A DNA stretch of 64,000 nucleotides, from the IMG/VR virus record IMGVR_UViG_3300032236_002285, positions 1-64,000 of that record. One strand, 5' to 3'. Below, one piece after another: positions 6,126 to 63,809 of this stretch. The translations under genes and the position numbers were made by a program. The notes beneath the pieces were generated by a model. The model was given only the letters and a program-made list of their open reading frames with translations. It made no database searches and was not told where the DNA came from. The stretch's first letter is position 1, and each line of letters opens with the position of its first letter.

Positions 6126-6890
6126 ATGAAACTTGTAAAATATTTTGAATTTAATCAACAAGATTTAGAACCTATTAAATCTTTTTATCTTAAAGAAGAA
6201 TTAAATCCTAGATTATGGGATGATTTTAAGTTAGATGATGAAGTAAGAGAAGAATTACTTACAATTGCTCAAGATTTTTATGAAAATGTTGAGGCTGGTG
6301 CTGATGTAGTTGATATAGTACTTGCTGGATCTTTATGTAACTATAACTGGTCTGAAAAGTATTCAGATTTTGATTTACATATTATTATTGATTTTGATGA
6401 TGTTGATGAAAACTTTGAATTAGTTGAGAAGTTTTGTGATTATGCTAAAAAGATTTGGAATGAACAACATGATATTAAAATCAAAGGCTATGAAGTTGAA
6501 ATAGCTATTCAAGATAATGATGATTTAGATAAAGCTATTGAAGGTGGTAGAATGGGTGGTGTTTTTTCTTTATTGAAAAATAAATGGATTAAAAGACCAG
6601 AAAGAATAGATTTTGAGCCTGATGAAAAGCTAATAGAAGAAAAATCTAAAACTATTATGATGTCTGTTGATGATATCGAAGAACAATCAGAAGAAGATAA
6701 ATATGAAGCTTTTGATGAAAAGATTTCAAAGGTTTGGAAGAAGATTAAAGATTTTAGACAAAGTGGTTTAGATTCTGAATCTGGCGAGTTTTCAGTTGGT
6801 AACTTAGTATTTAAGTTACTAAGAAGAAATGGGTACATTGGTAAAATAATGGAACTAAAGAGAAAAGTTTACGATAAACAATTTAAGTAA
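6126..6890 (+). CDS. Pol-beta superfamily nucleotidyltransferase with N-terminal CTS-like tag
   Basis: DIVLAGSLCNYNWSEKYSDFDLHIIID (GS...DxD motif), third acidic residue in YEVE. Confidence 0.75.
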   Translation: MKLVKYFEFNQQDLEPIKSFYLKEELNPRLWDDFKLDDEVREELLTIAQDFYENVEAGADVVDIVLAGSLCNYNWSEKYSDFDLHIIIDFDDVDENFELVEKFCDYAKKIWNEQHDIKIKGYEVEIAIQDNDDLDKAIEGGRMGGVFSLLKNKWIKRPERIDFEPDEKLIEEKSKTIMMSVDDIEEQSEEDKYEAFDEKISKVWKKIKDFRQSGLDSESGEFSVGNLVFKLLRRNGYIGKIMELKRKVYDKQFK

Positions 6891-6891
6891 T

Positions 6892-7587
6892 ATGGAAATT
6901 AAAATATCAGAAATAGAACAAGTATTCAAAGATGTCTTTGTTGCTGAAGAAGGTGTAGTAAATACAGTTGAATCTGTATATGAGATGTCAAGAGATGAAG
7001 ATTTCTACAAACTTGTTATCTCTATACATGGTTTATCAACTCAAGATACTTCAATTATACATACTAAGTTTATATTCAAAACAGACTTAAATAAAAGACA
7101 TCTTATTGAAGATTCTTTTATCTATCTATATGATATCAATTGTGTTTATCATAAGATAGAGTTTACAAATGTTGTAGACATGAAAAAGAAAATAGAAGAT
7201 ATTGTTGAATCAAAAAACTTTGGAGAGGATTTGCAAATTCTTTCTGACTTTATTGAAGCTCCAGCTATGTTCTTAAACTATTACATGAGAAGAGATAAGA
7301 TTACGGATTATTCAATATTTGATGTTGAGTATGAACCTAAGTTTAAAACAACTCCTTGTGATAAAACAACATTTGATTTTAAGATTAACATTAATAATAA
7401 TTATAAAATGGAACTATCTATACATAAAATAGATAGAGTTGATGAGGAAGAACTAGATACTTATAAGTTTCAATTTAAGTTTATGGATGAGATTGAAACA
7501 TTTGAAACAGATACTCTTAAAAACCTACACTTCTTTATTGGAGACCATATTGCTAAAATTTTAGATAGAAAATTAAAGAATAAGTAA
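6892..7587 (+). CDS. Hypothetical protein
   Basis: 231-aa ORF in operon, typical codon usage. Confidence 0.7.
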   Translation: MEIKISEIEQVFKDVFVAEEGVVNTVESVYEMSRDEDFYKLVISIHGLSTQDTSIIHTKFIFKTDLNKRHLIEDSFIYLYDINCVYHKIEFTNVVDMKKKIEDIVESKNFGEDLQILSDFIEAPAMFLNYYMRRDKITDYSIFDVEYEPKFKTTPCDKTTFDFKININNNYKMELSIHKIDRVDEEELDTYKFQFKFMDEIETFETDTLKNLHFFIGDHIAKILDRKLKNK

Positions 7588-8243
7588 TGAGATATCTTGA
7601 AAAATTTGTCAATTATTTAAATGAATCAACAGAGGATATAACCGATTTAACTAAAGAAGAGTTAGATGAGTTACTTATTCCTATTACAGATTTAGGTGTT
7701 CAATATACATTTTCACCACCAAGAGTTATCACGGATGGTGAATTTTCTGGATTCAAATCAATGAATATAGTTTTTAGAAACTCTTTTCAATTAGGACCAT
7801 CTGGTGGATATACTGAGCAAATTATTGATGATAAATTCTGGGACTTCTTAGATGAGTTAATAGCTCTTAAAAATCGTTTAGAAAGTTCTAGAGTTTCTAT
7901 TAATACTAACTGGAGACACCACATAGTTGTTACTTTTGTACAAAAAGCCAAAGTTGAAGGTGATTTATTTACAATACAAAAGTTGTATAATGATATGTGT
8001 TTAAGAACTAATGCCGCAAAGAGTGATTTTGTAAATAACATGACTAAGAGTTTAGATAAAGAAAATTTAAAAATTACAGTTAATTGTAATGGTTATAGAG
8101 AGGGTGCTTATACTGATAGAAAGTGGAATGGTCTTTTCAGAGGTATAGATTTTTCTAAATTTAATGTTGAAAAGGATATTACTGAAGATAGATATGGTAT
8201 TAAAAATGCTGTTATTACAATTACTCTTAAAAGTGAATCATAA
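7587..8243 (+). CDS. Hypothetical protein with CTS-like N-terminus (MRYLEKFVNYLNES)
   Basis: ORF coupled to the upstream gene through a TAATG overlap. Confidence 0.7.
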   Translation: MRYLEKFVNYLNESTEDITDLTKEELDELLIPITDLGVQYTFSPPRVITDGEFSGFKSMNIVFRNSFQLGPSGGYTEQIIDDKFWDFLDELIALKNRLESSRVSINTNWRHHIVVTFVQKAKVEGDLFTIQKLYNDMCLRTNAAKSDFVNNMTKSLDKENLKITVNCNGYREGAYTDRKWNGLFRGIDFSKFNVEKDITEDRYGIKNAVITITLKSES

Positions 8244-9720: not shown

Positions 9721-9986
9721 TTCATAAAAGAAATAACCTTATCTAAGTTTTCTCTGTTGAATCCGTCTAATGGTTTTCCGCCACTTTTTAAGTAGTCTCC
9801 GTATAAGTTATTATACTCATCTATTGTGTAGAATCTATTATCTATCTCTGATAATATTACATTTGTATCATGAAAGGTAACAGTTTTGTTTTGTAATCCC
9901 GTCTCTCCATATGCTGGTCCAATTGGTCCTACCAATTCAGTACCAGATACTTCTTCATTAAACTGTTTAAATGATTTAATCTTCAT
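9717..9986 (-). CDS. Small protein with CTS-like N-terminus (MKIKSFKQFNEE)
   Basis: 89-aa ORF carrying the shared N-terminal motif. Confidence 0.7.
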   Translation of the reverse strand: MKIKSFKQFNEEVSGTELVGPIGPAYGETGLQNKTVTFHDTNVILSEIDNRFYTIDEYNNLYGDYLKSGGKPLDGFNRENLDKVISFMN

Positions 9987-31354: not shown

Positions 31355-31915
31355 CTATTTTGATGTCTGACTTGACATCTTCTTGATATTATCCATCATA
31401 TTTTTTTCTACATCTTTCATTTTATCATCTAATGACTTTTGTGCTTCTGCTATATCTTTAACTAAAGAAGCTATAGTTGTCGTATTTGTCGATATTCTGT
31501 TGGTTATATCAGTGATTTTACCATTTACAGATTGTTTTGTACTGTCGTCGGTTATACTTTGTAGTTGACTACTAAAATCATCTTTTTTAACTTTATCATC
31601 AGCAATACTATTTTGAAGATTATCAACTTTTCTTTTAAGATTAGCAACATGTAAGTATTCAACTAAAAAAGGATTTTTAGGTGTTTTTTCATCGGCCTTG
31701 CCTATAATCTCATCAACCTTTATTTGTAAGTCAGCATCTGATTTTATTTTAAGATAAGCATTGTCTAACAAAGGTTTCTTTGTTTTGTATTCAGCCAATT
31801 GCTTTTGAGTTATTGATAACTCATCTTTAGCCATTTTAACATCAGGTTCGTCTGTTAGATTAATATCAAAGTCTGCTTCTTCTATAAAGAGTTTATATGT
31901 TTTAAGAGTTCTCAT
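31355..31915 (-). CDS. Coiled-coil protein with CTS-like N-terminus (MRTLKTYKLFIEE)
   Basis: 186-aa helical ORF. Confidence 0.7.
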   Translation of the reverse strand: MRTLKTYKLFIEEADFDINLTDEPDVKMAKDELSITQKQLAEYKTKKPLLDNAYLKIKSDADLQIKVDEIIGKADEKTPKNPFLVEYLHVANLKRKVDNLQNSIADDKVKKDDFSSQLQSITDDSTKQSVNGKITDITNRISTNTTTIASLVKDIAEAQKSLDDKMKDVEKNMMDNIKKMSSQTSK

Positions 31916-44272: not shown

Positions 44273-44760
44273 CCCTCGTCAGGCATATCAAAACAAATTC
44301 TTAAAACATCACCGTCAAATCCAACCGAACATTGTTCAAAGTTAGAAAAAGCTTGAAACCTCGGAACAATTTCTTCTTGAAGTAGTTTAAATATTTTTTT
44401 AATTTTATTATTATTTGCCATAATAATGTTCTTTAATTTTTCTAGATTTTCGATCTGATTGTCAACTGAATAGCCAAGTGGTGTATAAAGTAACTCTATA
44501 TTACCTGGTTCATCTGTTGGTGGTATTACTTCAAGTAAATATTTAGCTGTTAAGTAAGTTCCTTCTTCATCAACTTCCTCATCATTTATTTGAGGTATCG
44601 TTAATTCACAATCGTAAAAATAGTCGTTCTCTTTTGTATAGTCGTGAAATTCGCAGTGGAAATAATCAGATAATTCCATCATAATCTCTTTGAATGTTTC
44701 AAAATCACATTCTTCTCCTGAAGCTTCGTTGAACTTTTTTAAGTAAGTCATCTTTTTCAT
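44269..44760 (-). CDS. Acidic protein with CTS-like N-terminus (MTYLKKFNEA)
   Basis: 163-aa ORF. Confidence 0.65.
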   Translation of the reverse strand: MKKMTYLKKFNEASGEECDFETFKEIMMELSDYFHCEFHDYTKENDYFYDCELTIPQINDEEVDEEGTYLTAKYLLEVIPPTDEPGNIELLYTPLGYSVDNQIENLEKLKNIIMANNNKIKKIFKLLQEEIVPRFQAFSNFEQCSVGFDGDVLRICFDMPDEG

Positions 44761-45845
44761 AGTGTATCTATAAATTTATATAGTTTTTTAGTATATTCTT
44801 TTCTTTTGTATTCTGCATTTGTCATACAATAAGCAACAAAAGCAAAGTACTTAACTTTCTCTATTAGTACTTCTCTTGATAGTACACCACCAGCATATCT
44901 AAACTCAACATAATTATTGGATAGTTTTGTTATATTGAAGCCAAGATTCTTAAATCCGATATCAGTAACTTTTTTACTTATGAATTGATTTAATACAACT
45001 TCAGCTTCTTTTAAATTATGTAGGTCTAAAGATTTTAGCTTTAACTTTTCTTTATCAGTTAGTTTTCTCAAATATGGTATTAAAGAACCACAAAACTTGT
45101 TATTCATTCTCCAAGTCATGTCTTTGAATGTGTAGGGTGTTGTTTCTTTTTCTGAGAAGTCATTTAACAACATTAAACCTTTAATTGGATTCCACTCTAC
45201 TGGTTGGTTTGAACCAATGTTTATGTGTATACCAGTTCTTTCTGAGAAGTACCAATAATCTTGTTTTTCTAAATCATTATAAAAGTCATTTATCATCTCA
45301 ATTGATTCTGATAAACTTGGTATGTAAGTTTTTGGTTTAATTTCAATACCTCTATCTAAAGTAGAATCACCCACAAAATCAATCTTTCTATACCATTTTC
45401 TTGTAAAGTTAGGCATATGTTGTTTAACCATCCTTTTTAGATGTGAATAATTCTCCTCGTAAATAAATGATTTAATTGAGTTTTTAAGATGATCTATTAT
45501 TTCTTTTTCTCTTTCAGTTTCGTATTTATTAATATCAAACATCTCTTCAAATGTATTTAAATCAATAGATTTATCTTCAACATGATCATATAATTTATAC
45601 ATTAAATCATAAACTAAATCTTTTTCGGATTTCTTTCTTATTCTCATGTCTTTGTAAACAATATCTATAATATCTTCTACCGCATCTTCGTCAATATCTT
45701 TAAATTTAACCTTAATATTACTTCTATCTAATGTTTCTATTTCAAACTCAAATGCCACCGTGAAGTAATCGCTGAAGCTTTCAATCATTGCGATATCTTT
45801 AGGGTTTACTTCTTCAAATAAAGAGAATTTAATTAGATGTTTCAT
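44757..45845 (-). CDS. Putative amidoligase (COOH-NH2 ligase type 2) with CTS-like N-terminus
   Basis: AFEFEIE, DSTL..GIEI, TGIHINIG, VEFRYAGG; N-terminus MKHLIKFSLFEE. Confidence 0.7.
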   Translation of the reverse strand: MKHLIKFSLFEEVNPKDIAMIESFSDYFTVAFEFEIETLDRSNIKVKFKDIDEDAVEDIIDIVYKDMRIRKKSEKDLVYDLMYKLYDHVEDKSIDLNTFEEMFDINKYETEREKEIIDHLKNSIKSFIYEENYSHLKRMVKQHMPNFTRKWYRKIDFVGDSTLDRGIEIKPKTYIPSLSESIEMINDFYNDLEKQDYWYFSERTGIHINIGSNQPVEWNPIKGLMLLNDFSEKETTPYTFKDMTWRMNNKFCGSLIPYLRKLTDKEKLKLKSLDLHNLKEAEVVLNQFISKKVTDIGFKNLGFNITKLSNNYVEFRYAGGVLSREVLIEKVKYFAFVAYCMTNAEYKRKEYTKKLYKFIDTL

Positions 45846-54434: not shown

Positions 54435-56162
54435 ATGGCATCTTATAATCAATTTCAAGCCGGCTCAGGTCAATCAAATTTCACTTATACAAATAGTGCT
54501 GTTGAAAATAAAGGACTTTTTAGTAGAATTTTAAGAAGTTTGTCATCATACGGTATGAACTATGATGATATGATTGTTAGAAACCAAGTTGGTATTGGTA
54601 TCAACGAAGATCCATTTGCTGCTAGAGGAAACTCAATGTATGATTTCTTTTCACAAAGAGCAGTGGCTTCTGTTTTAAACAGAAAATCAATTCCTTATTT
54701 AGATAAAGCATACGCTGATAAAAGAAGAATTCTAAGAGAATATTCAATTAAAGATGAAATCAGAGATTTCGTTAGTTCTATTACAGATGAAAGTATTGTT
54801 TATAATGATGAAAGAGATTTTTGCTCACCTGCTGCTTTAGGTAATGACTATTCTCAAGAAATTAAAGATAAATACCAAGAATATTTTGAAAAAATTTATA
54901 ATAAATATGGCTTTGGTGATAACATCACAGCTTGGAATATGATGAGAGATTTCTTAATTGATGGTTATCTAGCATTGGAAGTTATTTATGATGATAAGAA
55001 AAAGAATATTATTGGTTTTAATAGATTAAGACCTGAAACATTAGTTCCCGCATTTGAACCAACAATTGGTCACTTGTGGATCCAGTTTCCAGAAGATCCT
55101 CAATTAAGAAGAATCTTCTTAGACTCTCAAATTGTTTATATCTCATATTCAACTCAAAATGATTATTCAGAAACATCTTATGTAGAGGGTTTAATTAAAC
55201 CTTATAACCAATTAAAGATTCTTGAACAAACAAGAGTAATGTTTAACATTATTAATGCTACGGTTTATCAAAAGTTTACTATTCCTATTAAGGGTTTATC
55301 AAGACAAAGAGCCGAAGAACAAATCGGTCAATTGATTAATGACTATTCGGAAGAAGTTGAATGGGATGATTCATTAGGTACATTAACTATTAATGGTGCT
55401 AAACACTTACCTTATAATAAACAAATTTGGTTCCCTGAAGGAGATGCTGGTACTCCAGCTATGGAATTGGTTTCACCTGAAGGACATAATTTGAATGAGT
55501 CAGATATGTTGACTTGGTTCTACAATGCTCTAAAAAGAGCTTCTAAAATTCCTTTCCAACGTTTTGATAAAGAAAATGGTGGTGGTAACTTAATCAATGA
55601 CTCATCAGATATGACAAGAGATGAGATTAAATTTTATAACTTTATTAATAGATTAAGAGCTAACTTCAAAGAGATTATCGTTAAGCCGTTAAAACTTCAA
55701 ATGTTAATTGAGTTTCCTGAATTAAAAGAAGATGAGGTTCTTATGAACCAAATTGATATTATCTTTAACTCAAATCAAGTATTTGAAGAATGGAAAAAAT
55801 TAAATAATTTGGCTAAGAAAGCTGAAATATTTGGTACTTTAGTTGGTATTATGAATGGTGAAAAACCTTACTTCCATATTGAGTATTTAATTGATAACGT
55901 ATTCAAATTAACTCCAGAAGAAAAAGCAGAAAACCAAAAATATTGGGCTAAAGATGCCGCTGGTGCTCCTGGTGGAGGCGGTGGTGCTGGTGCTCCAGGT
56001 GGTGAAGGCGGTGGTGAAGGCGTTGTTCCTGGTGAAGGCGGTGAAGCCGGTGGTGGTGAGGCTCCTGAAGCTGGTGGTGCTCAAGCTGCTCCTGAAGCTC
56101 AGGCGGCTCCTGAAAATCCTCCTCCAGCCGAAGGTGGTGGTGAAACCGAATTTGAATTCTAA
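54435..56162 (+). CDS. gp20: Portal protein
   Basis: FLIDG, KPYNQLKILE, AEEQIGQLINDY, ASKIPFQRF, MTRDEIKFYNFINRLR; Gly/Glu/Ala-rich tail. Confidence 0.92.
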   Translation: MASYNQFQAGSGQSNFTYTNSAVENKGLFSRILRSLSSYGMNYDDMIVRNQVGIGINEDPFAARGNSMYDFFSQRAVASVLNRKSIPYLDKAYADKRRILREYSIKDEIRDFVSSITDESIVYNDERDFCSPAALGNDYSQEIKDKYQEYFEKIYNKYGFGDNITAWNMMRDFLIDGYLALEVIYDDKKKNIIGFNRLRPETLVPAFEPTIGHLWIQFPEDPQLRRIFLDSQIVYISYSTQNDYSETSYVEGLIKPYNQLKILEQTRVMFNIINATVYQKFTIPIKGLSRQRAEEQIGQLINDYSEEVEWDDSLGTLTINGAKHLPYNKQIWFPEGDAGTPAMELVSPEGHNLNESDMLTWFYNALKRASKIPFQRFDKENGGGNLINDSSDMTRDEIKFYNFINRLRANFKEIIVKPLKLQMLIEFPELKEDEVLMNQIDIIFNSNQVFEEWKKLNNLAKKAEIFGTLVGIMNGEKPYFHIEYLIDNVFKLTPEEKAENQKYWAKDAAGAPGGGGGAGAPGGEGGGEGVVPGEGGEAGGGEAPEAGGAQAAPEAQAAPENPPPAEGGGETEFEF

Positions 56163-56173
56163 AACATATTATA

Positions 56174-56205
56174 AAAAAAGCCTCTCAAAATTGAGAGGCT
56201 TTTTT
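56174..56205. terminator. Bidirectional intrinsic terminator
   Basis: AAAAGCCTCTCAA-AA-TTGAGAGGCTTTT. Confidence 0.8.
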
Positions 56206-56656
56206 ATGCTGCTTGTTTTGGATAATCTATATAAAAGTATTTTATATTATTGTCAATGATTAATTGATTAATTTCAATCTCTACATTTGATTCTATCAAT
56301 GATTTTAACAAATCACCCATATCAGTACTTAATGGCTTTATACCTAATGTTAGTTTTTCAACTAAGTCGTCTTTTATTATAAAGTGCATAGACTTTACAT
56401 CAAAACAAGCTTCTTTTATTTTTGCTTCTTCTTTAATATTTGGTGTCATCATACCCCAAATCATTCCTTTGTTGTATATTTCTTCAATATCAAACTGAAC
56501 TCTTCTTCCTTCTAATAAGTTAGTTAGTTTAATCTCTCTTTTAAATGAAATCCAGTCGCTAAAATTTTTAAGTATATCTTCATAATACTCTAATTTAGCA
56601 TCTTTTAAAATGACATCATATTTATATGTTTCACTATTTAATGATAAAAGTCCCAT
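56204..56656 (-). CDS. Hypothetical protein
   Basis: 150-aa ORF coupled to rnr. Confidence 0.6.
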   Translation of the reverse strand: MGLLSLNSETYKYDVILKDAKLEYYEDILKNFSDWISFKREIKLTNLLEGRRVQFDIEEIYNKGMIWGMMTPNIKEEAKIKEACFDVKSMHFIIKDDLVEKLTLGIKPLSTDMGDLLKSLIESNVEIEINQLIIDNNIKYFYIDYPKQAA

Positions 56657-58536
56657 TACAATAAAGTAAAATCTATTTGTTTTCTTTCTAAATCTACAGA
56701 CTTAACCACAACTTTAAGAGCATCTCCTAATCTAATTTTATCACCAGATTCATTAGTTATTGTGTAGTTATTTGTATCAACTGACCAAGTTCCTTCTAAA
56801 GATTGATATCTAACCATTCCTTCGCACTTACTTTCAATCAATTCAACATACATACCCCAGTCAGTTACACCTGAAACAATACCATCAAATACATTACCTA
56901 TCTTATCTAAAAGATATTCAGCTTGTTTATATTTAATTGAATCTCTTTGAGCCTTAGCCGCAACCAATTCTCTAGCAGAACACCATTTAGCTTGCTCTTC
57001 AATCTTACCTGGATTTCCTTGACCTGCTTTGTTTAAGAAATCAAACAAAATTCTATGTGTAATTAAGTCCGGGTATCTACGAATTGGAGAAGTAAAGTGA
57101 GAATAGTGAGTAAATCCTAAACCATAGTGTCCGATGTTCTTAATTGTATAAGTTGCTTTAGACATACATCTAGTAACTAAAGTCTCAATCATATTTTCTT
57201 CAGGAGTGTCTTTAATCTCTTTTAGTAAGTTATTAAGTGATTTTTTAATTTCAGCTGGATCATCAAAGATTTCCACATCATATCCAAAAGTTTTACAAAC
57301 TCCAACTAAAGCATTTAACTTGTCTATATTTGGTGTGTCGTGAACACGATAAACATTTGCCCAAATAGCATCAGATAAAGTTTTAGCAACTGACTTATTA
57401 GCAAGTAACATAAACTCTTCAATTAACTTGTTGGCTTCTTTTTGTTCTTTGAAATAAACTCCAATTGGCTTTTTATTATCTTCAGCTAATTTGAATCTTA
57501 CTTCAATGCCTCCCATTTCAATGGAACCTTCATTAATTCTTTTCTTTCTAATCTTTTTTGCTAGTGTGTCAAGTAATCTAATTTCTTTAGAATAATCACC
57601 ATCTTTGCCTTCAATGATTTCTTGTGCTTCTTCATAAGCATATCTTCTATCAGAATGAATAACGGTTTTACCCATCCAAGTATTTAATATCTCACCATTA
57701 CTATTCAAAGTAAATACAACAGAAAATGCTAATCTGTCTTCGTGTGGTTTAAGTGAACATATACCATTACTTAAACGTTCTGGTAACATTGGAACACATC
57801 TATCAACTAGATAAACAGAGGTAGCTCTTTTGAAAGCTTCATCGTCTAATTTAGTTCCTGGTTTAACATAGTGACCTACGTCAGCAATGTGAACACCTAC
57901 TTCAATTTTATTATCACTAATAATATTAACTGATAAGGCATCATCAAAGTCTTTAGCATCAACTGGGTCAATGGTTAAAGTAGTAACACTTCTCATATCT
58001 TTACGAGACTTTATTTCTTTTTCAGTGATAGTCTCAGGAACTAATTGAGATTCATCAATAACTTCTTGTGGAAACTCAACAGGTAAACCATACTCAATCA
58101 TAATTGAGTTCATTTCTGTATTGTTGTCACCTGAATTTCCTAGTATTTTTGTGATTTTTCCTTGTGGTGATTTAGAATCTTCCCACTTTGTTAGTTCAAC
58201 TACAACCTTTTGGTCGTGTTCGGCTTTTAATCCGCCTTTAATATAAAAGTCAACTGGTACTTTATAACTATCAGGTACAACAAATATTGTTTTTTTACCT
58301 ATTTGTACTCTACCGACATATTCAGTTTTAAATCTTGAAACAACTTCAATGACTTTCCCTTCTAATTTTCTTTCGGCTTGAAATATTTGAATTTTTACTT
58401 TATCTAAGTGTAAAGCCTTACCTGTGTTTTTCTTGTAGATAAAGATTTCTTTATCTTCTACTAATAAGGATGCGTTACCACTTGTCGCAAATTCTATCTG
58501 ACCTTCAAATACATCCCCTTCTTTTAATTTTATCAT
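56656..58536 (-). CDS. rnr: Ribonuclease R
   Basis: TIDPVDAKDFDDALS, HIADV, IEEFMLLAN, HFTSPIRRYPDL, C-terminal S1 domain. Confidence 0.93.
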   Translation of the reverse strand: MIKLKEGDVFEGQIEFATSGNASLLVEDKEIFIYKKNTGKALHLDKVKIQIFQAERKLEGKVIEVVSRFKTEYVGRVQIGKKTIFVVPDSYKVPVDFYIKGGLKAEHDQKVVVELTKWEDSKSPQGKITKILGNSGDNNTEMNSIMIEYGLPVEFPQEVIDESQLVPETITEKEIKSRKDMRSVTTLTIDPVDAKDFDDALSVNIISDNKIEVGVHIADVGHYVKPGTKLDDEAFKRATSVYLVDRCVPMLPERLSNGICSLKPHEDRLAFSVVFTLNSNGEILNTWMGKTVIHSDRRYAYEEAQEIIEGKDGDYSKEIRLLDTLAKKIRKKRINEGSIEMGGIEVRFKLAEDNKKPIGVYFKEQKEANKLIEEFMLLANKSVAKTLSDAIWANVYRVHDTPNIDKLNALVGVCKTFGYDVEIFDDPAEIKKSLNNLLKEIKDTPEENMIETLVTRCMSKATYTIKNIGHYGLGFTHYSHFTSPIRRYPDLITHRILFDFLNKAGQGNPGKIEEQAKWCSARELVAAKAQRDSIKYKQAEYLLDKIGNVFDGIVSGVTDWGMYVELIESKCEGMVRYQSLEGTWSVDTNNYTITNESGDKIRLGDALKVVVKSVDLERKQIDFTLL

Positions 58537-58551
58537 ATATGAGTATTCTAT

Positions 58552-58947
58552 TTAAGAAACCTCATTTTGTTTATCTCTTTTTGATATATTATCTACACCA
58601 TATTTCTCAATAAGTGTATTCTTCATCTTATTAAGTACTTTTTTATTTTGTATTGGGTAGTCAACTCCAAAGTTTTTTCTTAGGGTTTCTTTTCTTTTTA
58701 CCTCTGAGCATTTTCTACAATAGTATTCTCCAAACTTGTTATCATATTTAACATAGTTCTTAAATATTACTTCTTTCTCAACTCCACATCCATCACACTT
58801 ACATTTTATTTTATAATGTGATCCTTTTGACATTAATTCAATTGGTATTTTAATTATTTCACCAATTGCTACATCATATCCTAAATCATCATAATACTGA
58901 TAATTTGATTCATTAATTTTTATCTCTATCTCTCTTGTTAGGATCAT
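58552..58947 (-). CDS. Zn-ribbon protein with homing-endonuclease-associated 'KYGVD' repeats; no nuclease domain evident
   Basis: CDGCG...CRKC; KNFGVDYP, EKYGVDN. Confidence 0.6.
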   Translation of the reverse strand: MILTREIEIKINESNYQYYDDLGYDVAIGEIIKIPIELMSKGSHYKIKCKCDGCGVEKEVIFKNYVKYDNKFGEYYCRKCSEVKRKETLRKNFGVDYPIQNKKVLNKMKNTLIEKYGVDNISKRDKQNEVS

Positions 58948-59058
58948 AAAAAACCGCTCAATTTCTTTTATTTATTAAATTTTATTCCTTTCCTCTTGAA
59001 TCTATCTATAAATAATCCTAACTTTTATAAATATGGTTTTCCTTTTAATAAATAGTGT

Positions 59059-59691
59059 ATGGCTTTTAAAAGAAAATGTACTAATTGTTTTTTTATTGGA
59101 ATGGATGATCAATACTTTACAAATAATAAAAAAATTTGTAATACTTGTTTTGATTTAAAATCTGAAGTTAAAATAAAGAAAAAATTAGAATCAAAAATAA
59201 AAAAGAGTGAGTATCTAAAATCTTGGCGATTAAAAAATAAAGAATATCTGAAAAAATATTCAGATAAGTGGATAAGTGAGAATCCTGAGAAAGTTAAAAA
59301 GTACTCAAAAAAAGCGTATTTAAAGAACAAAGAGTCTATAAATGAATATCAAAAATTTTATGTAAAAAAAAGAAGATTGAGTGATCCACTATTTAAATTG
59401 AAAACCAATCTAAGAAATCTAATAAAGAATAGTTTACAAAAACAAGGTTATACTAAAAAATCTAAAACCTATGATATAGTTGGGATATCTTATGATGAAT
59501 TTAGAGAGTATATAGAGAGTCAGTTTACAGATGGTATGTGTTGGGATAATTATGGAGAATGGCACTTAGATCATATAATTCCTATATGTTCTGCTGACTC
59601 TGAATCATCAGCTATTGATTTATGTTATTATAAAAATTTTCAACCATTATGGGCGGTTGATAATCAAACTAAAAGTGGTAAAATTTTATAG
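59059..59691 (+). mobile_element. HNH-type homing endonuclease
   Basis: CTNC...CNTC; DPLFKLK; WDNYGEWHLDHIIP...NFQPLWA..N. Confidence 0.75.
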
Positions 59692-59745: not shown

Positions 59746-59875
59746 TTATTTTTACACACTCTTGAAACAAAATGCCCTGATAGATTACACTCGGTCTGTA
59801 AATAATCCACCTTTGATTTTTTTGAATAAATAAGGTCTTATATATACTCTATATTTTAAAAAATAATAAACTTAA

Positions 59876-62038
59876 ATGAAACCAGTATTAATTATAGAAA
59901 ATTCAACAAACTCTCTTATTAGAGAGAATAATGGTTCACAAAAGAAGGATTATATTTTAGGTGGTACATTCACAGAATTTGGTGTTAAAAACCGTAATGA
60001 AAGAATTTACACTGCTGAGAAATTTCTTCCAGCGTTACAAGAACTAAATGAAAGAATGAGCAGCTTAGGTGTTGTTTATGGTGAGTTTGATCATCCAGAT
60101 GTTTTCGATACATCTCTTTCTAGAGCATCACACATCATTACAAAAGCTAATTATGTTAAAGAGTCAAATCTTGTTAGTGGTGAAATCAGATTATTAAATA
60201 CTTATTGGGGTAGAGAAGCTAAGGCATTGGTCGATGACGGATGTCCTGTTTTTGTTTCTTCAAGAGCAGCTGGTATCACTGAATCAGATGGTACTGTTTC
60301 GTTAAAAAAATTATTCACTTATGATATCGTTGCTGATCCGGGTTTTGCTTCAGCTAAAATGTCTATCAAGACGCTTAATGAATCATTAGGATATAATGAA
60401 AACTCTAACTTTAGGATATATGAAATGTCCGATGAGTCCAAAATAAATCAACTATTTGATATGAACAAAAATGAATTTGTTACAAAGCAACAGTTAACTG
60501 AATATTCTCAGTATTTAGTTAAGGAATTAGCTTCTACTAAAAAAGAAGTTAAAGGTGCTCTTACTAAAGGTAACTTATCTCCAAAGAAAATGGAGCAACT
60601 TTTAGAGTACTATGAAGAGTTAAATTCAACAAATGCTCAAGTTGTTAAATATCTAGATTATTTGGCTGAAAAAGTACAAGTTATGGTTAATGAGAACAAG
60701 TCGTTAAAAGAAACAACTGACAAACTTATTAAGCACAATGACTATTTAGCTGAAAATTTAGAGAAAGCTGTTAACTACTCTGAATATTTAGCTGAAAACT
60801 TAGACAAAAATATTGAGTATTCTGAATACTTAGCTGAGAACTTAGATAAGAACATTTCTTACTCTGAATACATTGCTGAAAACTTAGATAAGAACATTTC
60901 TTACTCTGAATATTTAGCTGAAAACTTAGACAAAAATATCGAATACTCTGAATACTTAGCAGAAAATCTTGATAAGAATATTGCTTATTCAGAATATATC
61001 GCTGAAAACTTAGACAAAAATATTGCATACGCTGAATACATTGCTGAGCACGTTGATAATTCAATTGCTTACTCTGAATACTTAGCAGAACATGTTGAAG
61101 GTAACATTGCTTACTCTGAATACATTGCTGAACATTTAGATGATAACATTGCTTATTCAGAATATATTGCTGAAAATCTTGACAAATCAATTTCATATCA
61201 AGGTTTAATCGTTGAAAAGTTAAATTCTAAAAAATTAAACGAATCAATGAATGAAGAAGATGAGGAAGCTTTCCCATCATTACATGATGCTGGTTTTGAA
61301 GATGCTCACGAAGAAGAAGGTCATGAAGATGCTCACGAAGATGACGAAGAAGATTGTGGTCCAATGGGTCATGAAGAAGAAGGTCATGAAGAAGAAGCTC
61401 ACGAAGACGTTCACGAAAATAAAGAAGAAGATGACGAAGAAGATTGCGGTCCAATGAGTCATGAAGAAGAAGGACATGAAGATGAAGAAGAAGAAAACTG
61501 GGAAGTTAAAGGTAACAGCGATTCTGAATTATCTGAGTCAATAAATAAATTAATTGAAGAAGCTAAAAAACGTAAAGTTTCTGAAAATAGTGATTTGAAT
61601 TTCTTAAAATTCTTAAACAAATCACAAGTAGATAGTTTCTATGCTTTGTCTGATGAAGACCAAGAGGCTGTTAAATTTCACATAAGCGAAAGAAATTACT
61701 TCACATCTAAAGATGTGTTAAGCCTAATCGCAGAAGCACTATCATCTAAGAATGAATCTCTTGAAGAAAGAGTTATCAGATTAATGCCTGAAAACACTAA
61801 GGCTATCTGGAGTCAAATGAATGAATCTGCTAAAAAATCTATCTTATCACAAGCTAGACTTTACCCAGCTGAAGTTTTAATGACTGAATCACAAATTGAA
61901 CATTTCTGGTTAACTAGAAATTTCAAGAAAAACGAATCTGTAACTAAAAAGTTAGTAGCTCATGAAAGTTTAATACAAGAAGATAAACTTTCTGATAATG
62001 ACGTTACTGCGATTATGGAAAGATTCAAAAACATCTAA
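59876..62038 (+). CDS. gp21: Prohead protease fused to scaffold/core protein (gp21+gp22-like)
   Basis: KNRNERIY, GEFDHP, ASHII, VSSRAAG, YDIVADPGF, followed by coiled-coil repeats and an acidic tract; directly upstream of the MCP. Confidence 0.9.
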   Translation: MKPVLIIENSTNSLIRENNGSQKKDYILGGTFTEFGVKNRNERIYTAEKFLPALQELNERMSSLGVVYGEFDHPDVFDTSLSRASHIITKANYVKESNLVSGEIRLLNTYWGREAKALVDDGCPVFVSSRAAGITESDGTVSLKKLFTYDIVADPGFASAKMSIKTLNESLGYNENSNFRIYEMSDESKINQLFDMNKNEFVTKQQLTEYSQYLVKELASTKKEVKGALTKGNLSPKKMEQLLEYYEELNSTNAQVVKYLDYLAEKVQVMVNENKSLKETTDKLIKHNDYLAENLEKAVNYSEYLAENLDKNIEYSEYLAENLDKNISYSEYIAENLDKNISYSEYLAENLDKNIEYSEYLAENLDKNIAYSEYIAENLDKNIAYAEYIAEHVDNSIAYSEYLAEHVEGNIAYSEYIAEHLDDNIAYSEYIAENLDKSISYQGLIVEKLNSKKLNESMNEEDEEAFPSLHDAGFEDAHEEEGHEDAHEDDEEDCGPMGHEEEGHEEEAHEDVHENKEEDDEEDCGPMSHEEEGHEDEEEENWEVKGNSDSELSESINKLIEEAKKRKVSENSDLNFLKFLNKSQVDSFYALSDEDQEAVKFHISERNYFTSKDVLSLIAEALSSKNESLEERVIRLMPENTKAIWSQMNESAKKSILSQARLYPAEVLMTESQIEHFWLTRNFKKNESVTKKLVAHESLIQEDKLSDNDVTAIMERFKNI
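60733..61200 (+). repeat. Coding tandem repeat, 42 nt / 14 aa (YSEY[LI]AENLDKNI[AES]), 10 full copies plus degenerate flanks
   Basis: Read directly in the translation of 59876..62038. Confidence 0.95.
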
Positions 62039-62114: not shown

Positions 62115-63809
62115 ATGTCACACATTAGAATAGACAAAACAAAAGCAGTTAAGAAATGGGCTCCTGTATTGGAGAACATGGGCGTTGCTGCTGATAGAGT
62201 TGAATGGATGTCAGAAATGGCTGAGTATCACTCAATCAATGAAAACGCATATGTAAATGCTTCTAACGTAGCAGGTATGGGTAGTGTATTGAATCCAGTT
62301 GTTGGTTCATTAGCTGGTAACCCAGGTAACTACACAAATGCTTACGGTAACGTAGCAGGTTCTGGCGACGTAGGTCAAAACTTACTTCCAGTAGCTATGA
62401 AAATCGCGGGTCAAACTATCGGTTTAGACTTAGTAGCTGTTAAACCAACTCCTGGTCCAAAAATCGATTTGTTATATATCGACTTCCAATATGACGATAT
62501 TAACACATCATCAAATGAAAGACCACAAGTTTTCAAATTGACTTGTGATAACGTAGCAGCTATCGAAGCAGCTATTACTTCTGATCTTTCTGGTTATTCA
62601 ATTAATCAAAGTCAAGGTGGTTTACAAGGTGGTAGAGTATTCTACGGTATTACTGCATCTAGCGTTTATAAAACAACAACTGAACCAGGTACTAAAACAA
62701 ACATCGTTGAGTTCTTAGGTTTCTCTCGTGTTGATGGTTTACCAATGTTCAGAGCTTACAGACAAAATAACTCTACAGCAGTAGGTGCTTATAATAACAC
62801 TTTTGACGCAACTAAAAACACTTTTGACCAAACTAGTCCAATAGTTTCTCAAATTTTAAGTATCTCTGGTGTAACTCCAACAGCTAACTCTAATAAAGCA
62901 GTTCAATTAGTATCTGCTCTTGAAGATCATCTTCCTGGTTTCTCTGCAAACTGGACATCTTCTACAGGTGCTGCTTCTGGTAACTACCCAATGGGTCGTC
63001 AAGCAGATGATGACAGCTATGCTGGTGTTATCGGTCCAAAAATTTCTTCTAAAACTGTTGCAGTTGGTACTATTGAAGTATCTTCAGCTCTTAGAAGAAC
63101 TGAAATTGAAGATATCAAAGCTAATACAGGTATGGATATCGTTCAAAAAATGGAATCAATCCTTGTTAACGAACTTTCTCAAACAATCTCTAAACAAATT
63201 GTTGCTAAAGTATTCGAAATGGGTGATTTGAACAGAACAGGCGCTCCTGCTTCTTCTGCAACTGCTAACCCTAACTCACTTTCAGGTTGGACAATTTTTG
63301 ACTTGGATACTGCATACGCATCTAACCAAGTTGGTGGTGAAACAACTCACGCTGTTCAACGTAAGTTGATCACTAAGATTGCTCACGCTTCTAACTATAT
63401 CGCAACTGAAGGTCGTGTTGGTCCTGCTCAATACCTTATCACAAACGGAGGTCTTGCTGCCGCTTTACAAGATATCGCTGGTTATACAATTAACCCAGTT
63501 AAATCTAAATTAAACGGTCAAGGTCAACTTTATCCAGTTGGTTCAATCGGAGATATCTCTATCTATGTAGATCCATATCAAAGATACAACGATAATAGAA
63601 TCGTTCTTGGTAGAAAAAACAACCCAGATCAACCAGGTATCATTTTCGTACCTTACTTGATGGCTCAGTCTATCTCAGTTATCTCTGAAGCTACATTCGC
63701 TCCACGTATGTTACTTCGTTCAAGATACGCTGTAACTGAAGTTGGTTGGTACCCACACAAGCAATACATGACTATTAAAGTTAATGATGCTGCTCAATTA
63801 CTTAACTAA
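62115..63809 (+). CDS. gp23: Major capsid protein
   Basis: KKWAPVLE, QTIGLDLVAVKP, IYVDPY, GIIFVPY, TFAPRMLLRSRYA; probable processing site SINE near residue 43. Confidence 0.93.
   Translation: MSHIRIDKTKAVKKWAPVLENMGVAADRVEWMSEMAEYHSINENAYVNASNVAGMGSVLNPVVGSLAGNPGNYTNAYGNVAGSGDVGQNLLPVAMKIAGQTIGLDLVAVKPTPGPKIDLLYIDFQYDDINTSSNERPQVFKLTCDNVAAIEAAITSDLSGYSINQSQGGLQGGRVFYGITASSVYKTTTEPGTKTNIVEFLGFSRVDGLPMFRAYRQNNSTAVGAYNNTFDATKNTFDQTSPIVSQILSISGVTPTANSNKAVQLVSALEDHLPGFSANWTSSTGAASGNYPMGRQADDDSYAGVIGPKISSKTVAVGTIEVSSALRRTEIEDIKANTGMDIVQKMESILVNELSQTISKQIVAKVFEMGDLNRTGAPASSATANPNSLSGWTIFDLDTAYASNQVGGETTHAVQRKLITKIAHASNYIATEGRVGPAQYLITNGGLAAALQDIAGYTINPVKSKLNGQGQLYPVGSIGDISIYVDPYQRYNDNRIVLGRKNNPDQPGIIFVPYLMAQSISVISEATFAPRMLLRSRYAVTEVGWYPHKQYMTIKVNDAAQLLN

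What the first reader, a model, noticed from the sequence alone, without database searches (positions are those of the whole stretch)
60733..61200. Protease-scaffold fusion with a perforated 14-aa repeat coil
Seen: ten near-perfect YSEY[LI]AENLDKNI repeats (two heptads each), each containing L/I-A-E. Known: T4 gp21 cleaves after L/I-x-E, the T4 CTS ends in FIAE, and gp21 and gp22 are separate genes in T4. Inference: a coiled-coil ruler whose copy number may tune head size, with built-in cut sites for disassembly. It may also be the multivalent docking surface (acidic/aromatic) for the basic-aromatic cargo tags.
Basis: partly seen in the sequence, partly recalled or inferred. Interest (0 to 1): 0.65.

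Follow-up and report, generated by a model that had tools for sequence, protein, structure and literature searches.

The report
Head protease fused to repeat scaffold
In a huge (over 476 kb) freshwater phage, one gene joins the head-maturation protease to a long helical scaffold of fourteen 14-residue repeats; each repeat carries a likely protease cut site and the same short motif as the phage's apparent cargo-targeting tags, so the fusion is a known kind, the repeat design looks new, and the "head-size ruler" idea has only weak support.

Summary
Window 59876-62038 (+) encodes a 720-aa protein with a period-14 array at aa 259-454: 10 near-perfect units plus 4 degenerate ones.

- **Protease:** the N-terminal 185 aa are a T4 gp21-type prohead protease. 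The profile matches PDB 5JBL at E 7e-30, the fold matches, and H73/S128/D150 are invariant.
- **Scaffold:** the rest lies where T4 gp22 lies, between protease and gp23-like capsid gene. It is a predicted long helix, then an acidic disordered stretch, then a conserved helical C-domain.
- **Repeat unit:** each unit keeps Y-x-x-Y-[ILV]-A-E. [LIVM]-x-E is present in 87% of 174 units across deep clades, matching the T4 cleavage rule.
- **Tags:** 24-43 of 547 genes in this genome start with M-basic-[YF]-x-x-F-[IL]-x-E (about 3 expected). This mirrors the T4 capsid-targeting sequence and the repeat's own first heptad.
- **Ruler:** copy number is always integral (9-18; 14 in 83% of close relatives). 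It tracks genome size only loosely (n=5, rho 0.82, p 0.09), and the 543-kb Lak phage fusion has no coil.

Protease-scaffold fusions are already annotated (Tenacibaculum phage PTm1). Verdict: a new variant of a known kind. Cleavage and cargo docking are plausible but untested.

The parts
59838..59846 (+). Promoter-like TTATATATA about 30 nt upstream of the start codon. A similar element precedes the capsid gene.
   Evidence: Read from the sequence. Related T[TA]ATATAT elements precede 143 of 547 genes. Function is inferred only.
59876..62038 (+). Protease-scaffold fusion gene, 720 aa (P0001). Single copy in the 476-kb contig.
59876..60430 (+). T4 gp21-type prohead serine protease domain (aa 1-185). 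Catalytic H73 (60092-60094), S128 (60257-60259), D150 (60323-60325). Conserved candidate autocleavage sites: L-I-I-E8|N and L-N-E169|S (60380-60382).
   Evidence: phrog_207 E 1e-31. Profile against PDB 5JBL, E 6.8e-30. Foldseek 5jbl, probability 1.0, TMt 0.70. Invariant residues in A2. The triad is assigned by analogy with PMC5694885. T4 has LIE-9 and a C-terminal cut (PMC9026906).
60431..60649 (+). Helical linker (aa 186-258), not repetitive.
   Evidence: AF2 helices 204-231 and 236 onward.
60650..61237 (+). Array of 14 units of 14 residues (aa 259-454). The ten near-perfect units are at 60776-61195. Net charge -26. Predicted near-continuous alpha-helix, about 29 nm if straight. One [LI]-x-E per unit.
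61238..61507 (+). Acidic, His-rich, predicted disordered segment (aa 455-544, net charge -45, 10 His, 2 Cys), with the duplicated motif EEDCGPM[GS]HEEEGHE. Highly variable among relatives except for F-P-S-L..A-G-F-E and a C-G-P motif.
61508..62035 (+). Conserved helical C-terminal domain (aa 545-720). Invariant F576, P638, W645, F677, W678, R681, with a basic tail in most clades. Likely the end that anchors the protein in the prohead.
   Evidence: A3 alignment. AF2 pLDDT 70.6. No PDB fold match. BFVD matches to another fusion protein and to the Tenacibaculum phage pT24 'prohead core scaffold'.
62115..63809 (+). gp23-like major capsid protein (P0002), with conserved H-x-[ILM]-x-E|N at about residue 43 (candidate propeptide cut).
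   Evidence: Pfam Gp23 E 4.5e-27. N-terminal comparison of 25 orthologues.
54435..56162 (+). gp20-like portal protein. It defines the T4-like order portal - protease - scaffold - capsid.
   Evidence: Pfam Portal_T4 E 4.7e-59.
31355..31915 (-). Gene with an N-terminal CTS-like tag (MRTLKTYKLFIEE|A). It is one of the tagged genes inside the window.
7587..8243 (+). Gene with an N-terminal CTS-like tag (MRYLEKFVNYLNE|S).

Best explanation
The gene encodes a T4-type prohead core protein in which the maturation protease (gp21 type) and the scaffold (the functional counterpart of gp22) are one polypeptide.

**Shown**
- The N-terminal domain has the gp21 fold and an intact His/Ser/Asp set.
- The gene sits between portal and capsid genes.
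- The middle is a long amphipathic, acidic helix made of 14 in-register 14-residue units.
- The unit's first heptad Y-x-x-Y-[ILV]-A-E is its most conserved part.
- Copy number changes only in whole units.

**Inferred**
- The conserved C-terminal domain anchors the protein in the assembling prohead, and the helices pack side by side to form the core.
- After shell completion the protease frees itself at the conserved [LIV]-x-E sites (E8, E169).
- It then cuts after the Glu of every unit, dicing the helix into 14-mers of about 1.6-1.7 kDa and charge -1 to -4. These can leave the head, as T4 gp22 fragments do.
- It also cuts the capsid propeptide at [ILM]-x-E|N.

**More speculative**
- The heptad equals the consensus of the phage's own N-terminal tags and of the T4 capsid-targeting sequence. 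In T4 the two aromatic residues serve targeting, and I and E serve processing.
- So each unit may double as a docking site where tagged cargo helices join the core by like-with-like packing and are released by the same cut.
For: **Protease**
- phrog_207 E 1e-31.
- Profile against 5JBL, E 6.8e-30.
- Foldseek 5jbl, probability 1.0.
- H73, S128 and D150 invariant in 28 fused and free relatives.

**Gene order and copy number**
- Order is portal, protease-scaffold, gp23-like capsid.
- There is no second protease or C-domain gene in the contig.
- More distant relatives have free proteases of about 215 aa.
- Serratia phage BF has adjacent separate protease and scaffold genes.

**Helix**
- AF2 helices 236-343 and 347-451.
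- 3.5-residue hydrophobic period.

**Selection on the peptide**
- pN/pS is 0.09-0.23 with saturated pS.

**Unit conservation over 14 clade representatives, 174 units**
- Y1 80%, Y4 70%, [ILV]5 100%, A6 68%, E7 87%.

**Cut-site logic**
- T4 rule L/I-x-E, and gp22 is cut into multiple fragments (PMC9026906; PMC5694885).
- T4 gp22 has 16 [LI]-x-E sites against 5.8 expected; the array has 14 against 5.8.
- The capsid site is conserved.
- E8 and E169 are invariant and align with T4 LIE-9 and ITE-187.
- PTm1's unrelated 16-residue repeat also carries one [LI]-x-E per unit.

**Tags**
- 24 of 547 genes by the strict motif (2.9 expected) and 43 by a broad motif (3.2 expected). The tagged proteins are mutually unrelated.
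- Codon choice at the conserved positions follows genome usage, so selection acts on the peptide.
- The tag is kept in RNA ligase orthologues of two relatives and absent from two others.
- T4 CTS MKTYQEFIAE (PMC8442874), with targeting at residues 4 and 7 and processing at 8 and 10.
Against: - No cleavage, assembly or binding has been observed; all functional steps are by analogy.
- The scaffold part has no detectable sequence similarity to T4 gp22 or to the BF scaffold (E 0.86). It has no Pfam or PHROG family.
- This protein's own Pfam S77 score (20.2 bits) is below the gathering cut-off of 27.
- E7 could be conserved for helix packing or an i/i+4 salt bridge with K11 rather than for cleavage.
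- In the 462-kb relative only about half the units keep [LIV]-x-E.
- A 1:1 protease:scaffold ratio differs from T4 (about 100 gp21 to 576 gp22), and no conserved internal start was found.
- The Lak fusion has an acidic linker in place of the coil. The middle part may therefore be a spacer, with another protein as the true scaffold.
- AF2 confidence in the array is only 50-70.
- The complex prediction of repeat plus tag gave no answer.
- Some tagged proteins (DeoC aldolase, methyltransferase) are not obvious capsid cargo.
Confidence: 0.7

Rival explanations
1. Molecular ruler: the number of 14-residue units sets the length of the core helix and thereby the capsid size (T number), as a tape-measure protein sets tail length.
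For: - The length changes only in whole units. All anchor-to-anchor distances are multiples of 14 in 168 unique close relatives.
- 14 units are held in 83% of sequences that differ by up to about 25% in protein sequence, which suggests stabilising selection on length.
- In five complete genomes the units rise with size: 462 kb 12 units, 636 kb 13, 635 kb 14, 642 kb 14, 735 kb 16. Spearman rho is 0.82 (genome sizes in PMC7162821).
- T4 core proteins are thought to influence head size.
Against: - With n = 5, p is 0.09, and the points are not phylogenetically independent.
- Close relatives carry 11, 12, 13, 15 and 18 units.
- A JGI contig of 816,658 bp carries 14 units (its completeness is unknown).
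- The 543-kb Lak-B5 fusion has no coil.
- A straight 196-residue helix (about 29 nm) is under half the roughly 65-70 nm inner radius expected for a 640-kb genome. That radius is my own estimate from a DNA packing density of about 0.5 bp per cubic nm.
- One unit adds only 2.1 nm.
- Short-read unitigs break inside the array, so some copy numbers may be assembly errors.
Confidence: 0.15
2. Cargo-docking platform: the array's main role is to bind the N-terminal tags of 24-43 phage proteins, one site per unit, and so load them into the prohead. Cleavage at [IL]-x-E then releases both. This is compatible with the best explanation, as an added function.
For: - The heptad is shared between unit (Y-S-E-Y-[IL]-A-E), tags ([YF]-x-x-F-[IL]-x-E) and T4 CTS residues 4-10 (Y-Q-E-F-I-A-E).
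- In T4 the aromatic positions are the targeting determinants, and internal proteins co-purify with gp22.
- Tags are basic (M-I-K-K...) while the array is acidic (net -26).
- P0001 alone holds 12 of the 106 such heptads in the proteome.
- The tag is a portable add-on.
Against: - No binding evidence exists; the complex prediction gave no answer.
- The shared heptad may simply be the protease's extended recognition motif.
- It is not shown that the tagged proteins are virion components.
- Many tagged genes share a start-proximal promoter-like element (11 of 24), so co-regulation rather than packaging may link them.
Confidence: 0.3
3. Protease-delivery tether: the C-terminal domain targets the protease to the shell or portal. 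The repeat helix is a spacer or oligomerisation stalk that is not diced at every unit, and a different protein is the real scaffold.
For: - The protease and C-domain are the parts conserved in all fusions (PTm1, Lak, Mahaphage-like). The middle differs: 16-residue repeat, acidic linker, 14-residue repeat.
- Fusion stoichiometry of 1:1 is unlike T4.
- There is no homology to gp22.
Against: - No other gene lies between protease and capsid gene, where T4-like phages keep the scaffold.
- No other protein in the contig has a comparable helical repeat.
- The array is under strong peptide-level selection, with a cut-site motif in every unit.
- GenBank annotators of PTm1 and pT24 also read the homologous protein as core scaffold. 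That is annotation, not experiment.
Confidence: 0.15

Closest known systems
Bacteriophage T4 gp21 (prohead protease, MEROPS S77, PDB 5JBL) together with gp22 (core scaffold)
   Same: - Same protease fold and catalytic residues.
- Same gene order: portal, protease, scaffold, gp23-like capsid.
- The scaffold is acidic and helical, with about 3-fold enrichment of [LI]-x-E, many as [LI]-A-E.
- N- and C-terminal candidate autocleavage sites align.
   Different: - There are two genes in T4 and one here.
- No sequence similarity is detectable in the scaffold part.
- T4 gp22 has no tandem repeat.
- The T4 ratio of protease to scaffold is about 1:6.
- T4 also has gp67 and gp68, which were not found here between portal and protease.
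Tenacibaculum phage PTm1 ORF-300, 'prohead core scaffolding protein and protease' (BBI90692.1), and the pT24 'prohead core scaffold'
   Same: - Cultured Bacteroidetes jumbo phage with the same fusion architecture: protease, repeat helix, acidic stretch, homologous C-domain. The gene sits directly upstream of a related capsid gene.
- There is one [LI]-x-E per repeat unit.
   Different: - The repeat is 16 residues (E-x-W-[IL]...L-S-E-x-x), 6-7 units, and unrelated in sequence to the 14-residue unit.
- The genome is 225 kb.
Protease-scaffold fusions or nested genes of herpesviruses (UL26/UL26.5), lambda (C/Nu3) and P2 (gpO). Recalled from general knowledge, not tested here.
   Same: - A protease is joined to a scaffold whose C-terminus binds the shell.
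- Self-release happens by cleavage.
- Herpesvirus proteases appear as weak fold matches.
   Different: - Those systems make extra scaffold from an internal start; none was established here.
- None is known to me to have a tandem-repeat scaffold with one cut site per unit.
T4 capsid-targeting sequence (CTS, MKTYQEFIAE) of internal proteins
   Same: - The repeat's first heptad matches CTS residues 4-10 at 5 of 7 positions, plus F/Y. The match includes the targeting (aromatic) and processing (I, E) determinants.
- The genome carries 24-43 N-terminal tags of this type.
   Different: - The CTS is a single N-terminal peptide on cargo.
- Here the motif is internal, repeated 10-14 times, and lies in the scaffold itself.
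Lak megaphage (Prevotella phage Lak-B5) protease fusion
   Same: - gp21-type protease (46% identity over the domain) fused to a C-terminal extension ending in a related domain.
- Same Mahaphage clade.
   Different: - The middle is an acidic low-complexity linker with no 14-residue coil.
- The gene is not next to the capsid gene.
- It holds in-frame TAG codons (6 of 6 internal stops), read through in my script only.

Membership tests
Peptidase S77 (T4 gp21 prohead protease) | gp21/assemblin-like fold | tested here: met
   Foldseek of the AF2 model: 5jbl chains E 2e-8, probability 1.0, TMt 0.67-0.71. Herpesvirus proteases appear as weaker hits.
Peptidase S77 (T4 gp21 prohead protease) | Catalytic His, Ser (and Asp) conserved | tested here: met
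   H73, S128 and D150 are invariant in 28 fused and free relatives. They align with the mutated His and Ser positions of the 5JBL chain. The triad is as in PMC5694885.
Peptidase S77 (T4 gp21 prohead protease) | Pfam PF03420 gathering score | tested here: not met
   20.2 bits against a cut-off of 27 for P0001. Relatives P0123, P0165 and P0241 pass with 41-51 bits and also pass S80. Family profile against 5JBL gives E 6.8e-30. I take this as a divergent member, not a non-member.
Peptidase S77 (T4 gp21 prohead protease) | Cleaves after Glu in [LI]-x-E and autoprocesses | not testable with these tools
   Only conserved candidate sites are seen: E8, E169, the capsid I-N-E43|N, the tags and the repeat units.
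T4 gp22-type prohead core scaffold | Sequence homology to gp22 or to annotated scaffolds | tested here: not met
   No Pfam or PHROG scaffold family. BLASTP against the Serratia BF scaffold gives E 0.86. Only the C-domain matches the pT24 'prohead core scaffold', in fold space (E 0.088, probability 0.97).
T4 gp22-type prohead core scaffold | Encoded between protease and major capsid gene; acidic, helical; rich in protease sites | tested here: met
T4 gp22-type prohead core scaffold | Forms the prohead core and is degraded at maturation | not testable with these tools
   Needs prohead biochemistry.
Alpha-helical coiled coil | Heptad (3.5-residue) hydrophobic periodicity on a continuous helix | tested here: met
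   The strongest hydrophobic period is 3.5. AF2 gives helices 236-343 and 347-451 at pLDDT 50-70. The hydrophobic and aromatic positions (1, 4, 5 and 6, 9, 13) form two seams rather than one a/d stripe. This is read from the unit and is my inference.
Alpha-helical coiled coil | Self-association into a bundle | not tested
   The single complex job scored the tag peptide as partner, not the self-association of the two array copies, and it gave no answer.
Molecular ruler (tape-measure-like) | Length of the protein scales with the size of the structure built | tested here: inconclusive
   Five complete genomes give rho 0.82, p 0.09. Counter-examples are the 816-kb contig with 14 units, 11-18 units among close relatives, and the coil-less 543-kb Lak fusion.
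T4-type capsid-targeting sequence | Short N-terminal peptide, aromatic-x-x-aromatic-[IL]-x-E, on otherwise unrelated proteins | tested here: met
   This holds for the tags, not for the repeat. 24 of 547 gene starts match against 2.9 expected, and there is only one paralogous pair among them. The broad form gives 43 against 3.2. The tag is modular in RNA ligase orthologues. Packaging itself is not testable here.

The most novel reading that the evidence does not exclude
The scaffold is a tandem array of capsid-targeting-sequence modules. Each 14-residue unit would be both a docking site for one tagged cargo helix (like-with-like aromatic packing) and a protease cut site. The number of units would then set how much cargo, drawn from roughly 24-43 tagged proteins, is loaded. 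The whole core and its cargo links would be dissolved by one protease specificity. This would identify what a T4-type CTS binds, and would suggest that CTS tags arose as detached scaffold units.
Probability: 0.22. Interest if true: 0.8.

Novelty: new variant of a known kind. Interest (0 to 1): 0.55.

Why it matters
How very large phage heads (genomes of 0.5-0.7 Mb) are scaffolded is unknown, and for the phiKZ-type giant phages no counterpart of the T4 gp22 scaffold has been confirmed (PMC5694885).

- **A candidate core protein.** This family has more than 4,700 clusters at 90% identity in public metagenomes. It offers a concrete candidate for the Mahaphage-like clade, with a simple periodic design that can be tested in vitro: protease domain plus repeat substrate.
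- **A link to cargo targeting.** The repeat's heptad coincides with the T4 capsid-targeting sequence and with dozens of N-terminal tags in the same genome. That makes an old question directly testable: what the CTS recognises in the core.
- **Possible tools.** The system points to a natural, modular way to load proteins into very large capsids, which is of interest for phage-based delivery.
- **If only the ordinary reading holds,** the result is still a usable annotation for a very abundant gene now labelled "hypothetical" or, wrongly, "methyl-accepting chemotaxis protein".

Tried and rejected
1. **Complex prediction.** I submitted two copies of array aa 285-412 plus the first 40 aa of the tagged protein at 31355-31915 (-). 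The verdict was "no answer" (score 0.00, controls not run). It is not evidence either way.
2. **Direct PDB sequence search.** P0001 and its N-terminal 200 aa gave nothing useful. Only the family profile found 5JBL.
3. **Homology of the scaffold part.** The Serratia BF scaffold gave E 0.86. PHROG and Pfam gave only chance coiled-coil hits such as bZIP and tail fibre. The one-piece tblastn match across the BF protease and scaffold genes is therefore protease homology plus coiled-coil composition.
4. **C-domain fold.** It had no PDB match. tblastn of the C-domain found only the six uncultured huge phages.
5. **Size of the window's own genome.**
   - The contig starts inside an ORF and has no terminal repeat.
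   - DNA mapping of its ends on LR745206 and LR756502 was uninformative because of divergence and rearrangement.
   - So 476 kb is a lower bound, and I left this genome out of the size correlation.
6. **The 816,658-bp JGI contig.** It could not be searched for self-overlap because the record is not held.
7. **Lak protease.** I first looked next to the Lak capsid gene and found nothing. It lies elsewhere in that genome.
8. **Internal start for a scaffold-only product.** There is only a weak promoter-like TTTAGGATATAT before in-frame M184, and it is not conserved in deeper clades. I did not adopt it.
9. **Reads.**
   - All available runs are Logan contigs. They break inside the array and cannot show copy-number variants or transcription.
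10. **Large representative-protein search.** I did not use it, since the word search and family scans settled the family.
Full report
**1. What is there**

The window region 59876-62038 (+) is one open frame of 720 aa (P0001). Tandem Repeats Finder gives 60739-61186, period 42 nt, 10.7 copies, only 74% nucleotide matches.

At the protein level:
- Ten units Y-[SA]-E-Y-[LI]-A-E-[NH]-[LV]-[DE]-x-[NS]-I-x lie at aa 301-440.
- HNDYLAENLEKAVN precedes them.
- Degenerate units in the same register extend the array to 14 units, aa 259-454, nt 60650-61237.

Between units, synonymous sites are close to saturation (pS 0.68-0.76) while pN is 0.07-0.155. The array is therefore old and conserved as a peptide, not a recent slippage product. 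Hydrophobicity peaks at period 3.5. The antisense 141-aa ORF is a shadow of the repeat.

**2. What the protein is**

*Protease domain (aa 1-185)*
- It matches PHROG 207, head maturation protease, at E 1e-31.
- It matches Pfam S77 only weakly: 20.2 bits against a cut-off of 27.
- A profile of 28 fused and free relatives hits the T4 gp21 structure 5JBL at E 6.8e-30.
- The AlphaFold model matches 5JBL with probability 1.0 and TMt 0.70.
- H73, S128 and D150 are invariant. They correspond to the T4 triad (the 5JBL chain carries substitutions at the His and Ser positions).

*Gene context*
- The downstream gene is a gp23-like capsid protein.
- A gp20-like portal lies upstream at 54435-56162.
- An RNase II/R-like gene and two endonuclease-like genes are inserted between portal and protease.
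- This is the T4 order 20 - 21 - 22 - 23, with the 21 and 22 positions occupied by one gene.

*The rest of the protein, from AlphaFold and composition*
- Helices at 204-231, 236-343 and 347-451, with pLDDT 50-70.
- A disordered acidic stretch at 452-548, net charge -45.
- A helical C-domain at 550-720.

*C-domain*
- It is conserved across the whole family.
- It has no PDB fold match.
- In BFVD it matches another "T4 prohead protease" fusion and the "prohead core scaffold" of Tenacibaculum phage pT24.

*Scaffold assignment*
- The scaffold part has no detectable similarity to T4 gp22 or to the Serratia BF scaffold.
- "Scaffold" therefore rests on position, composition and architecture, not homology.
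- Both domains are single copy in the 476-kb contig.

**3. Relatives**

*Closest records.* These are the uncultured huge phages of Al-Shayeb et al.:

| Record | Genome size (bp) | Identity to P0001 |
|---|---|---|
| LR745206 | 634,780 | 84% |
| LR756502 | 642,428 | 82% |
| LR756501 | 735,411 | 54% |
| LR756504 | 636,363 | 50% |
| LR756500 | 462,018 | 34% |

The four largest are complete circular Mahaphage-clade genomes with predicted Bacteroidetes hosts (PMC7162821). All have the same fusion architecture.

*Abundance.* The family is very abundant. More than 4,702 clusters at 90% identity were found, and a comparable number around a deeper clade. IMG/VR holds 346 loci.

*Free proteases.* More distant relatives are free proteases of about 215 aa.

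*PTm1.* The cultured Tenacibaculum phage PTm1 (225 kb) carries a homologous fusion already annotated "prohead core scaffolding protein and protease". Its middle part is a different repeat of 6-7 units of 16 residues, each with one [LI]-x-E.

*Lak-B5.* Lak-B5 (543 kb) also has a fusion, but with an acidic linker and no coil. Its six internal stops are all TAG, so in my own script I marked them as read-through.

The fusion is thus a known kind. The 14-residue array is specific to the Mahaphage-like lineages.

**4. The unit and the cut-site reading**

Over 14 clade representatives (174 units), the conserved positions are Y1 (80%), Y4 (70%), [ILV]5 (100%), A6 (68%), E7 (87%), D10 and I13. [LIVM]-x-E at positions 5-7 holds in 87% of units.

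What is known from T4:
- gp21 cleaves after Glu in L/I-x-E.
- It cuts gp22, gp67 and gp68 into multiple fragments that leave the head (PMC9026906; PMC5694885).

Observations that fit this rule here:
- T4 gp22 holds 16 [LI]-x-E sites where 5.8 are expected. Five have the form [LI]-A-E, including E-W-L-A-E|N.
- The array here holds 14 where 5.8 are expected.
- The capsid protein keeps H-x-[ILM]-x-E|N at about residue 43 in every clade.
- E8 and E169 of the protease domain are invariant. They align with T4 LIE-9 and ITE-187. This fits self-release of the protease from the scaffold.

Cutting after each unit's Glu would give thirteen 14-mers of 1.58-1.70 kDa with charge +1 to -4, and -1 to -4 for the twelve from the repeat proper. 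None of this has been observed directly. E7 could equally be kept for helix packing.

**5. The tags**

Scanning the whole contig showed a recurrent gene start.
- 24 of 547 predicted genes begin with M-(2-9 residues, mostly basic)-[YFW]-x-x-[YFWL]-[LIVM]-x-E, typically M-I-K-K-Y-x-[DQ]-F-I-[KN]-E. Only 2.9 are expected.
- Only one pair among the tagged proteins is paralogous.
- A broader pattern finds 43 starts against 3.2 expected.
- Codons at the conserved positions follow genome-wide usage, and I/L/V and Y/F/W interchange. Selection therefore acts on the peptide.
- The exact M-I-K-K-Y..F form occurs in three of five relatives and in none of the reversed-pattern controls.
- In the RNA ligase 1-like gene, the tag is present in this genome and in two close relatives. 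It is missing from two more distant orthologues, whose conserved core starts immediately. This is the behaviour of a portable leader.
- Tagged proteins include an RNA ligase, a methyltransferase, an RNase T-like exonuclease, a DeoC aldolase, an AAA_33/zeta-type kinase, and many unknowns.

The tag mirrors the T4 capsid-targeting sequence MKTYQEFIAE (PMC8442874). In that sequence, residues 4 and 7 (Y, F) serve targeting and residues 8 and 10 (I, E) serve processing.

The repeat's first heptad Y-S-E-Y-[IL]-A-E has the same four determinants. P0001 alone contains 12 of the 106 such heptads in the predicted proteome.

This supports two points:
- The protease specificity is inferred to be T4-like.

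Binding is untested; the one complex prediction returned "no answer".

**6. The ruler idea**

Anchor-to-anchor distances are always multiples of 14.
- In 168 unique close relatives, 14 units occur in 139, 15 in 22, 11-13 in 6, and 18 in 1.
- Deeper clades have 9-18 units. Expansions of different local unit types appear in different lineages.

In the five complete genomes the counts are:

| Genome size | Units |
|---|---|
| 462 kb | 12 |
| 636 kb | 13 |
| 635 kb | 14 |
| 642 kb | 14 |
| 735 kb | 16 |

Spearman rho is 0.82, p 0.09, and the points are not independent.

Points against a ruler:
- The window's own contig is truncated, since it starts inside an ORF, and cannot be used.
- An 816,658-bp JGI contig carries 14 units.
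- Lak at 543 kb has no coil.
- Short-read unitigs break within the array, so some deviant counts may be assembly errors.
- A straight array is about 29 nm long. That is less than half the inner radius I estimate for a 640-kb head.

I rate the ruler as possible but weak (0.15). The modal count does suggest some constraint on length.

**7. Verdict**

- **Best explanation (0.7):** a gp21-type protease fused to a clade-specific helical repeat scaffold. It is built to be diced by its own protease, and its C-domain serves as the anchor.
- **Added hypotheses:** cargo docking (0.3) and ruler (0.15).
- **Main rival:** a protease tether with the true scaffold elsewhere (0.15).
- **Novelty:** a new variant of a known kind.
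- **Interest:** 0.55. This rests mainly on the periodic CTS-like design and the large tag family it points to.

Noticed in passing
Whole contig G000. In the window: 7587-8243 (+), 31355-31915 (-), 9717-9986 (-), 44757-45845 (-). Looser forms at 6126 (+) and 43658 (+).: A large family of N-terminal tags, M-(basic)-[YF]-x-x-F-[IL]-x-E, on mutually unrelated proteins: 24 strict and 43 broad of 547 gene starts, with about 3 expected. They resemble the T4 capsid-targeting sequence. Tagged proteins include an RNA ligase 1-like enzyme, a methyltransferase, an RNase T-like exonuclease, a DeoC aldolase and an AAA_33/zeta-type kinase. The tag is gained or lost between orthologues.
   Followed up: partly
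G000 genome-wide, e.g. upstream of the genes at 100383 (-), 117885 (-), 135178 (-), 146938 (+), 164451 (+). In the window, 59838-59846 and upstream of 62115.: The promoter-like element T[TA]ATATAT precedes 143 of 547 genes. There is a sharp peak ending 5-6 nt before the ATG (49 genes) and a second peak at -20 to -26. This suggests leaderless or very short-leader transcripts. 11 of the 24 tagged genes belong to the start-proximal class.
   Followed up: partly
window 56204-59691: Inserted between the portal and protease genes are four genes:
- a 150-aa ORF;
- an RNase II/R-like gene (626 aa; RNB, S1 and CSD2 domains in the identical relative; phrog_13933 E 1e-147);
- a DUF7487 / homing-endonuclease-like gene;
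- an endonuclease VII-like gene.

The last one is absent from some relatives (L158) and present in others (L159).
   Followed up: partly
window 1-2679 (+): The contig begins inside a very long Ser/Gly-rich ORF, open for at least 892 aa, with a 27-nt period of about 50 copies and nested 9/18/36/90-nt periods. This is probably where the assembly broke. IMG/VR labels the record a 'provirus' and 97% complete, which looks doubtful.
   Followed up: partly
window 61238-61507: The acidic linker holds a duplicated His/Cys motif, EEDCGPM[GS]HEEEGHE. A C-G-P motif and F-P-S-L..A-G-F-E recur in the otherwise hypervariable linkers of relatives. The motif might be a metal site, or a further recognition or cleavage element.
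   Followed up: no
window 62115-62250 and orthologues in L001-L130: The capsid protein N-terminus is conserved: K-K-W-x-P-[VI]-[LI]-[ED] (as in T4 gp23), W-M-S-E-Y-A-E-[FYM]-H, then [ILM]-x-E|N at about residue 43. The S-E-Y-A-E stretch resembles the repeat heptad with one residue missing.
   Followed up: partly
window 60413-60430: A weak promoter-like TTTAGGATATAT lies 3 nt before the in-frame M184, exactly at the protease/scaffold boundary. It could give a scaffold-only product, as in lambda or herpesviruses, but M184 is not conserved in deeper clades.
   Followed up: partly
L158 (JGI 3300071516, contig Ga0620986_00085): A metagenome contig of 816,658 bp carries a 90%-identical 14-unit orthologue. 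If it is not a concatemer, it would exceed the largest published phage genome of this clade (735 kb).
   Followed up: partly
L162:4237-5931 (Tenacibaculum phage PTm1 ORF-300): This homologous fusion has an independent 16-residue repeat, E-x-W-[IL]-x-x-x-[FYL]-x-K-x-L-S-E-x-x, in 6-7 units (aa 257-368). Each unit has one [LI]-x-E and conserved aromatic residues. This is a convergent 'one cut site per unit' design in a cultured phage.
   Followed up: partly
window 60805-61126 in runs X1-X3 and X15: Logan unitigs from freshwater, riverine and estuary metagenomes all break inside the array. One metatranscriptome (X15) holds contigs of relatives of the gene, which does not prove transcription.
   Followed up: partly
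proteins P0182, P0197, P0223, P0225, P0236: Public annotation calls some family members 'methyl-accepting chemotaxis protein' or 'YoxC'. This is presumably a coiled-coil artefact.
   Followed up: no
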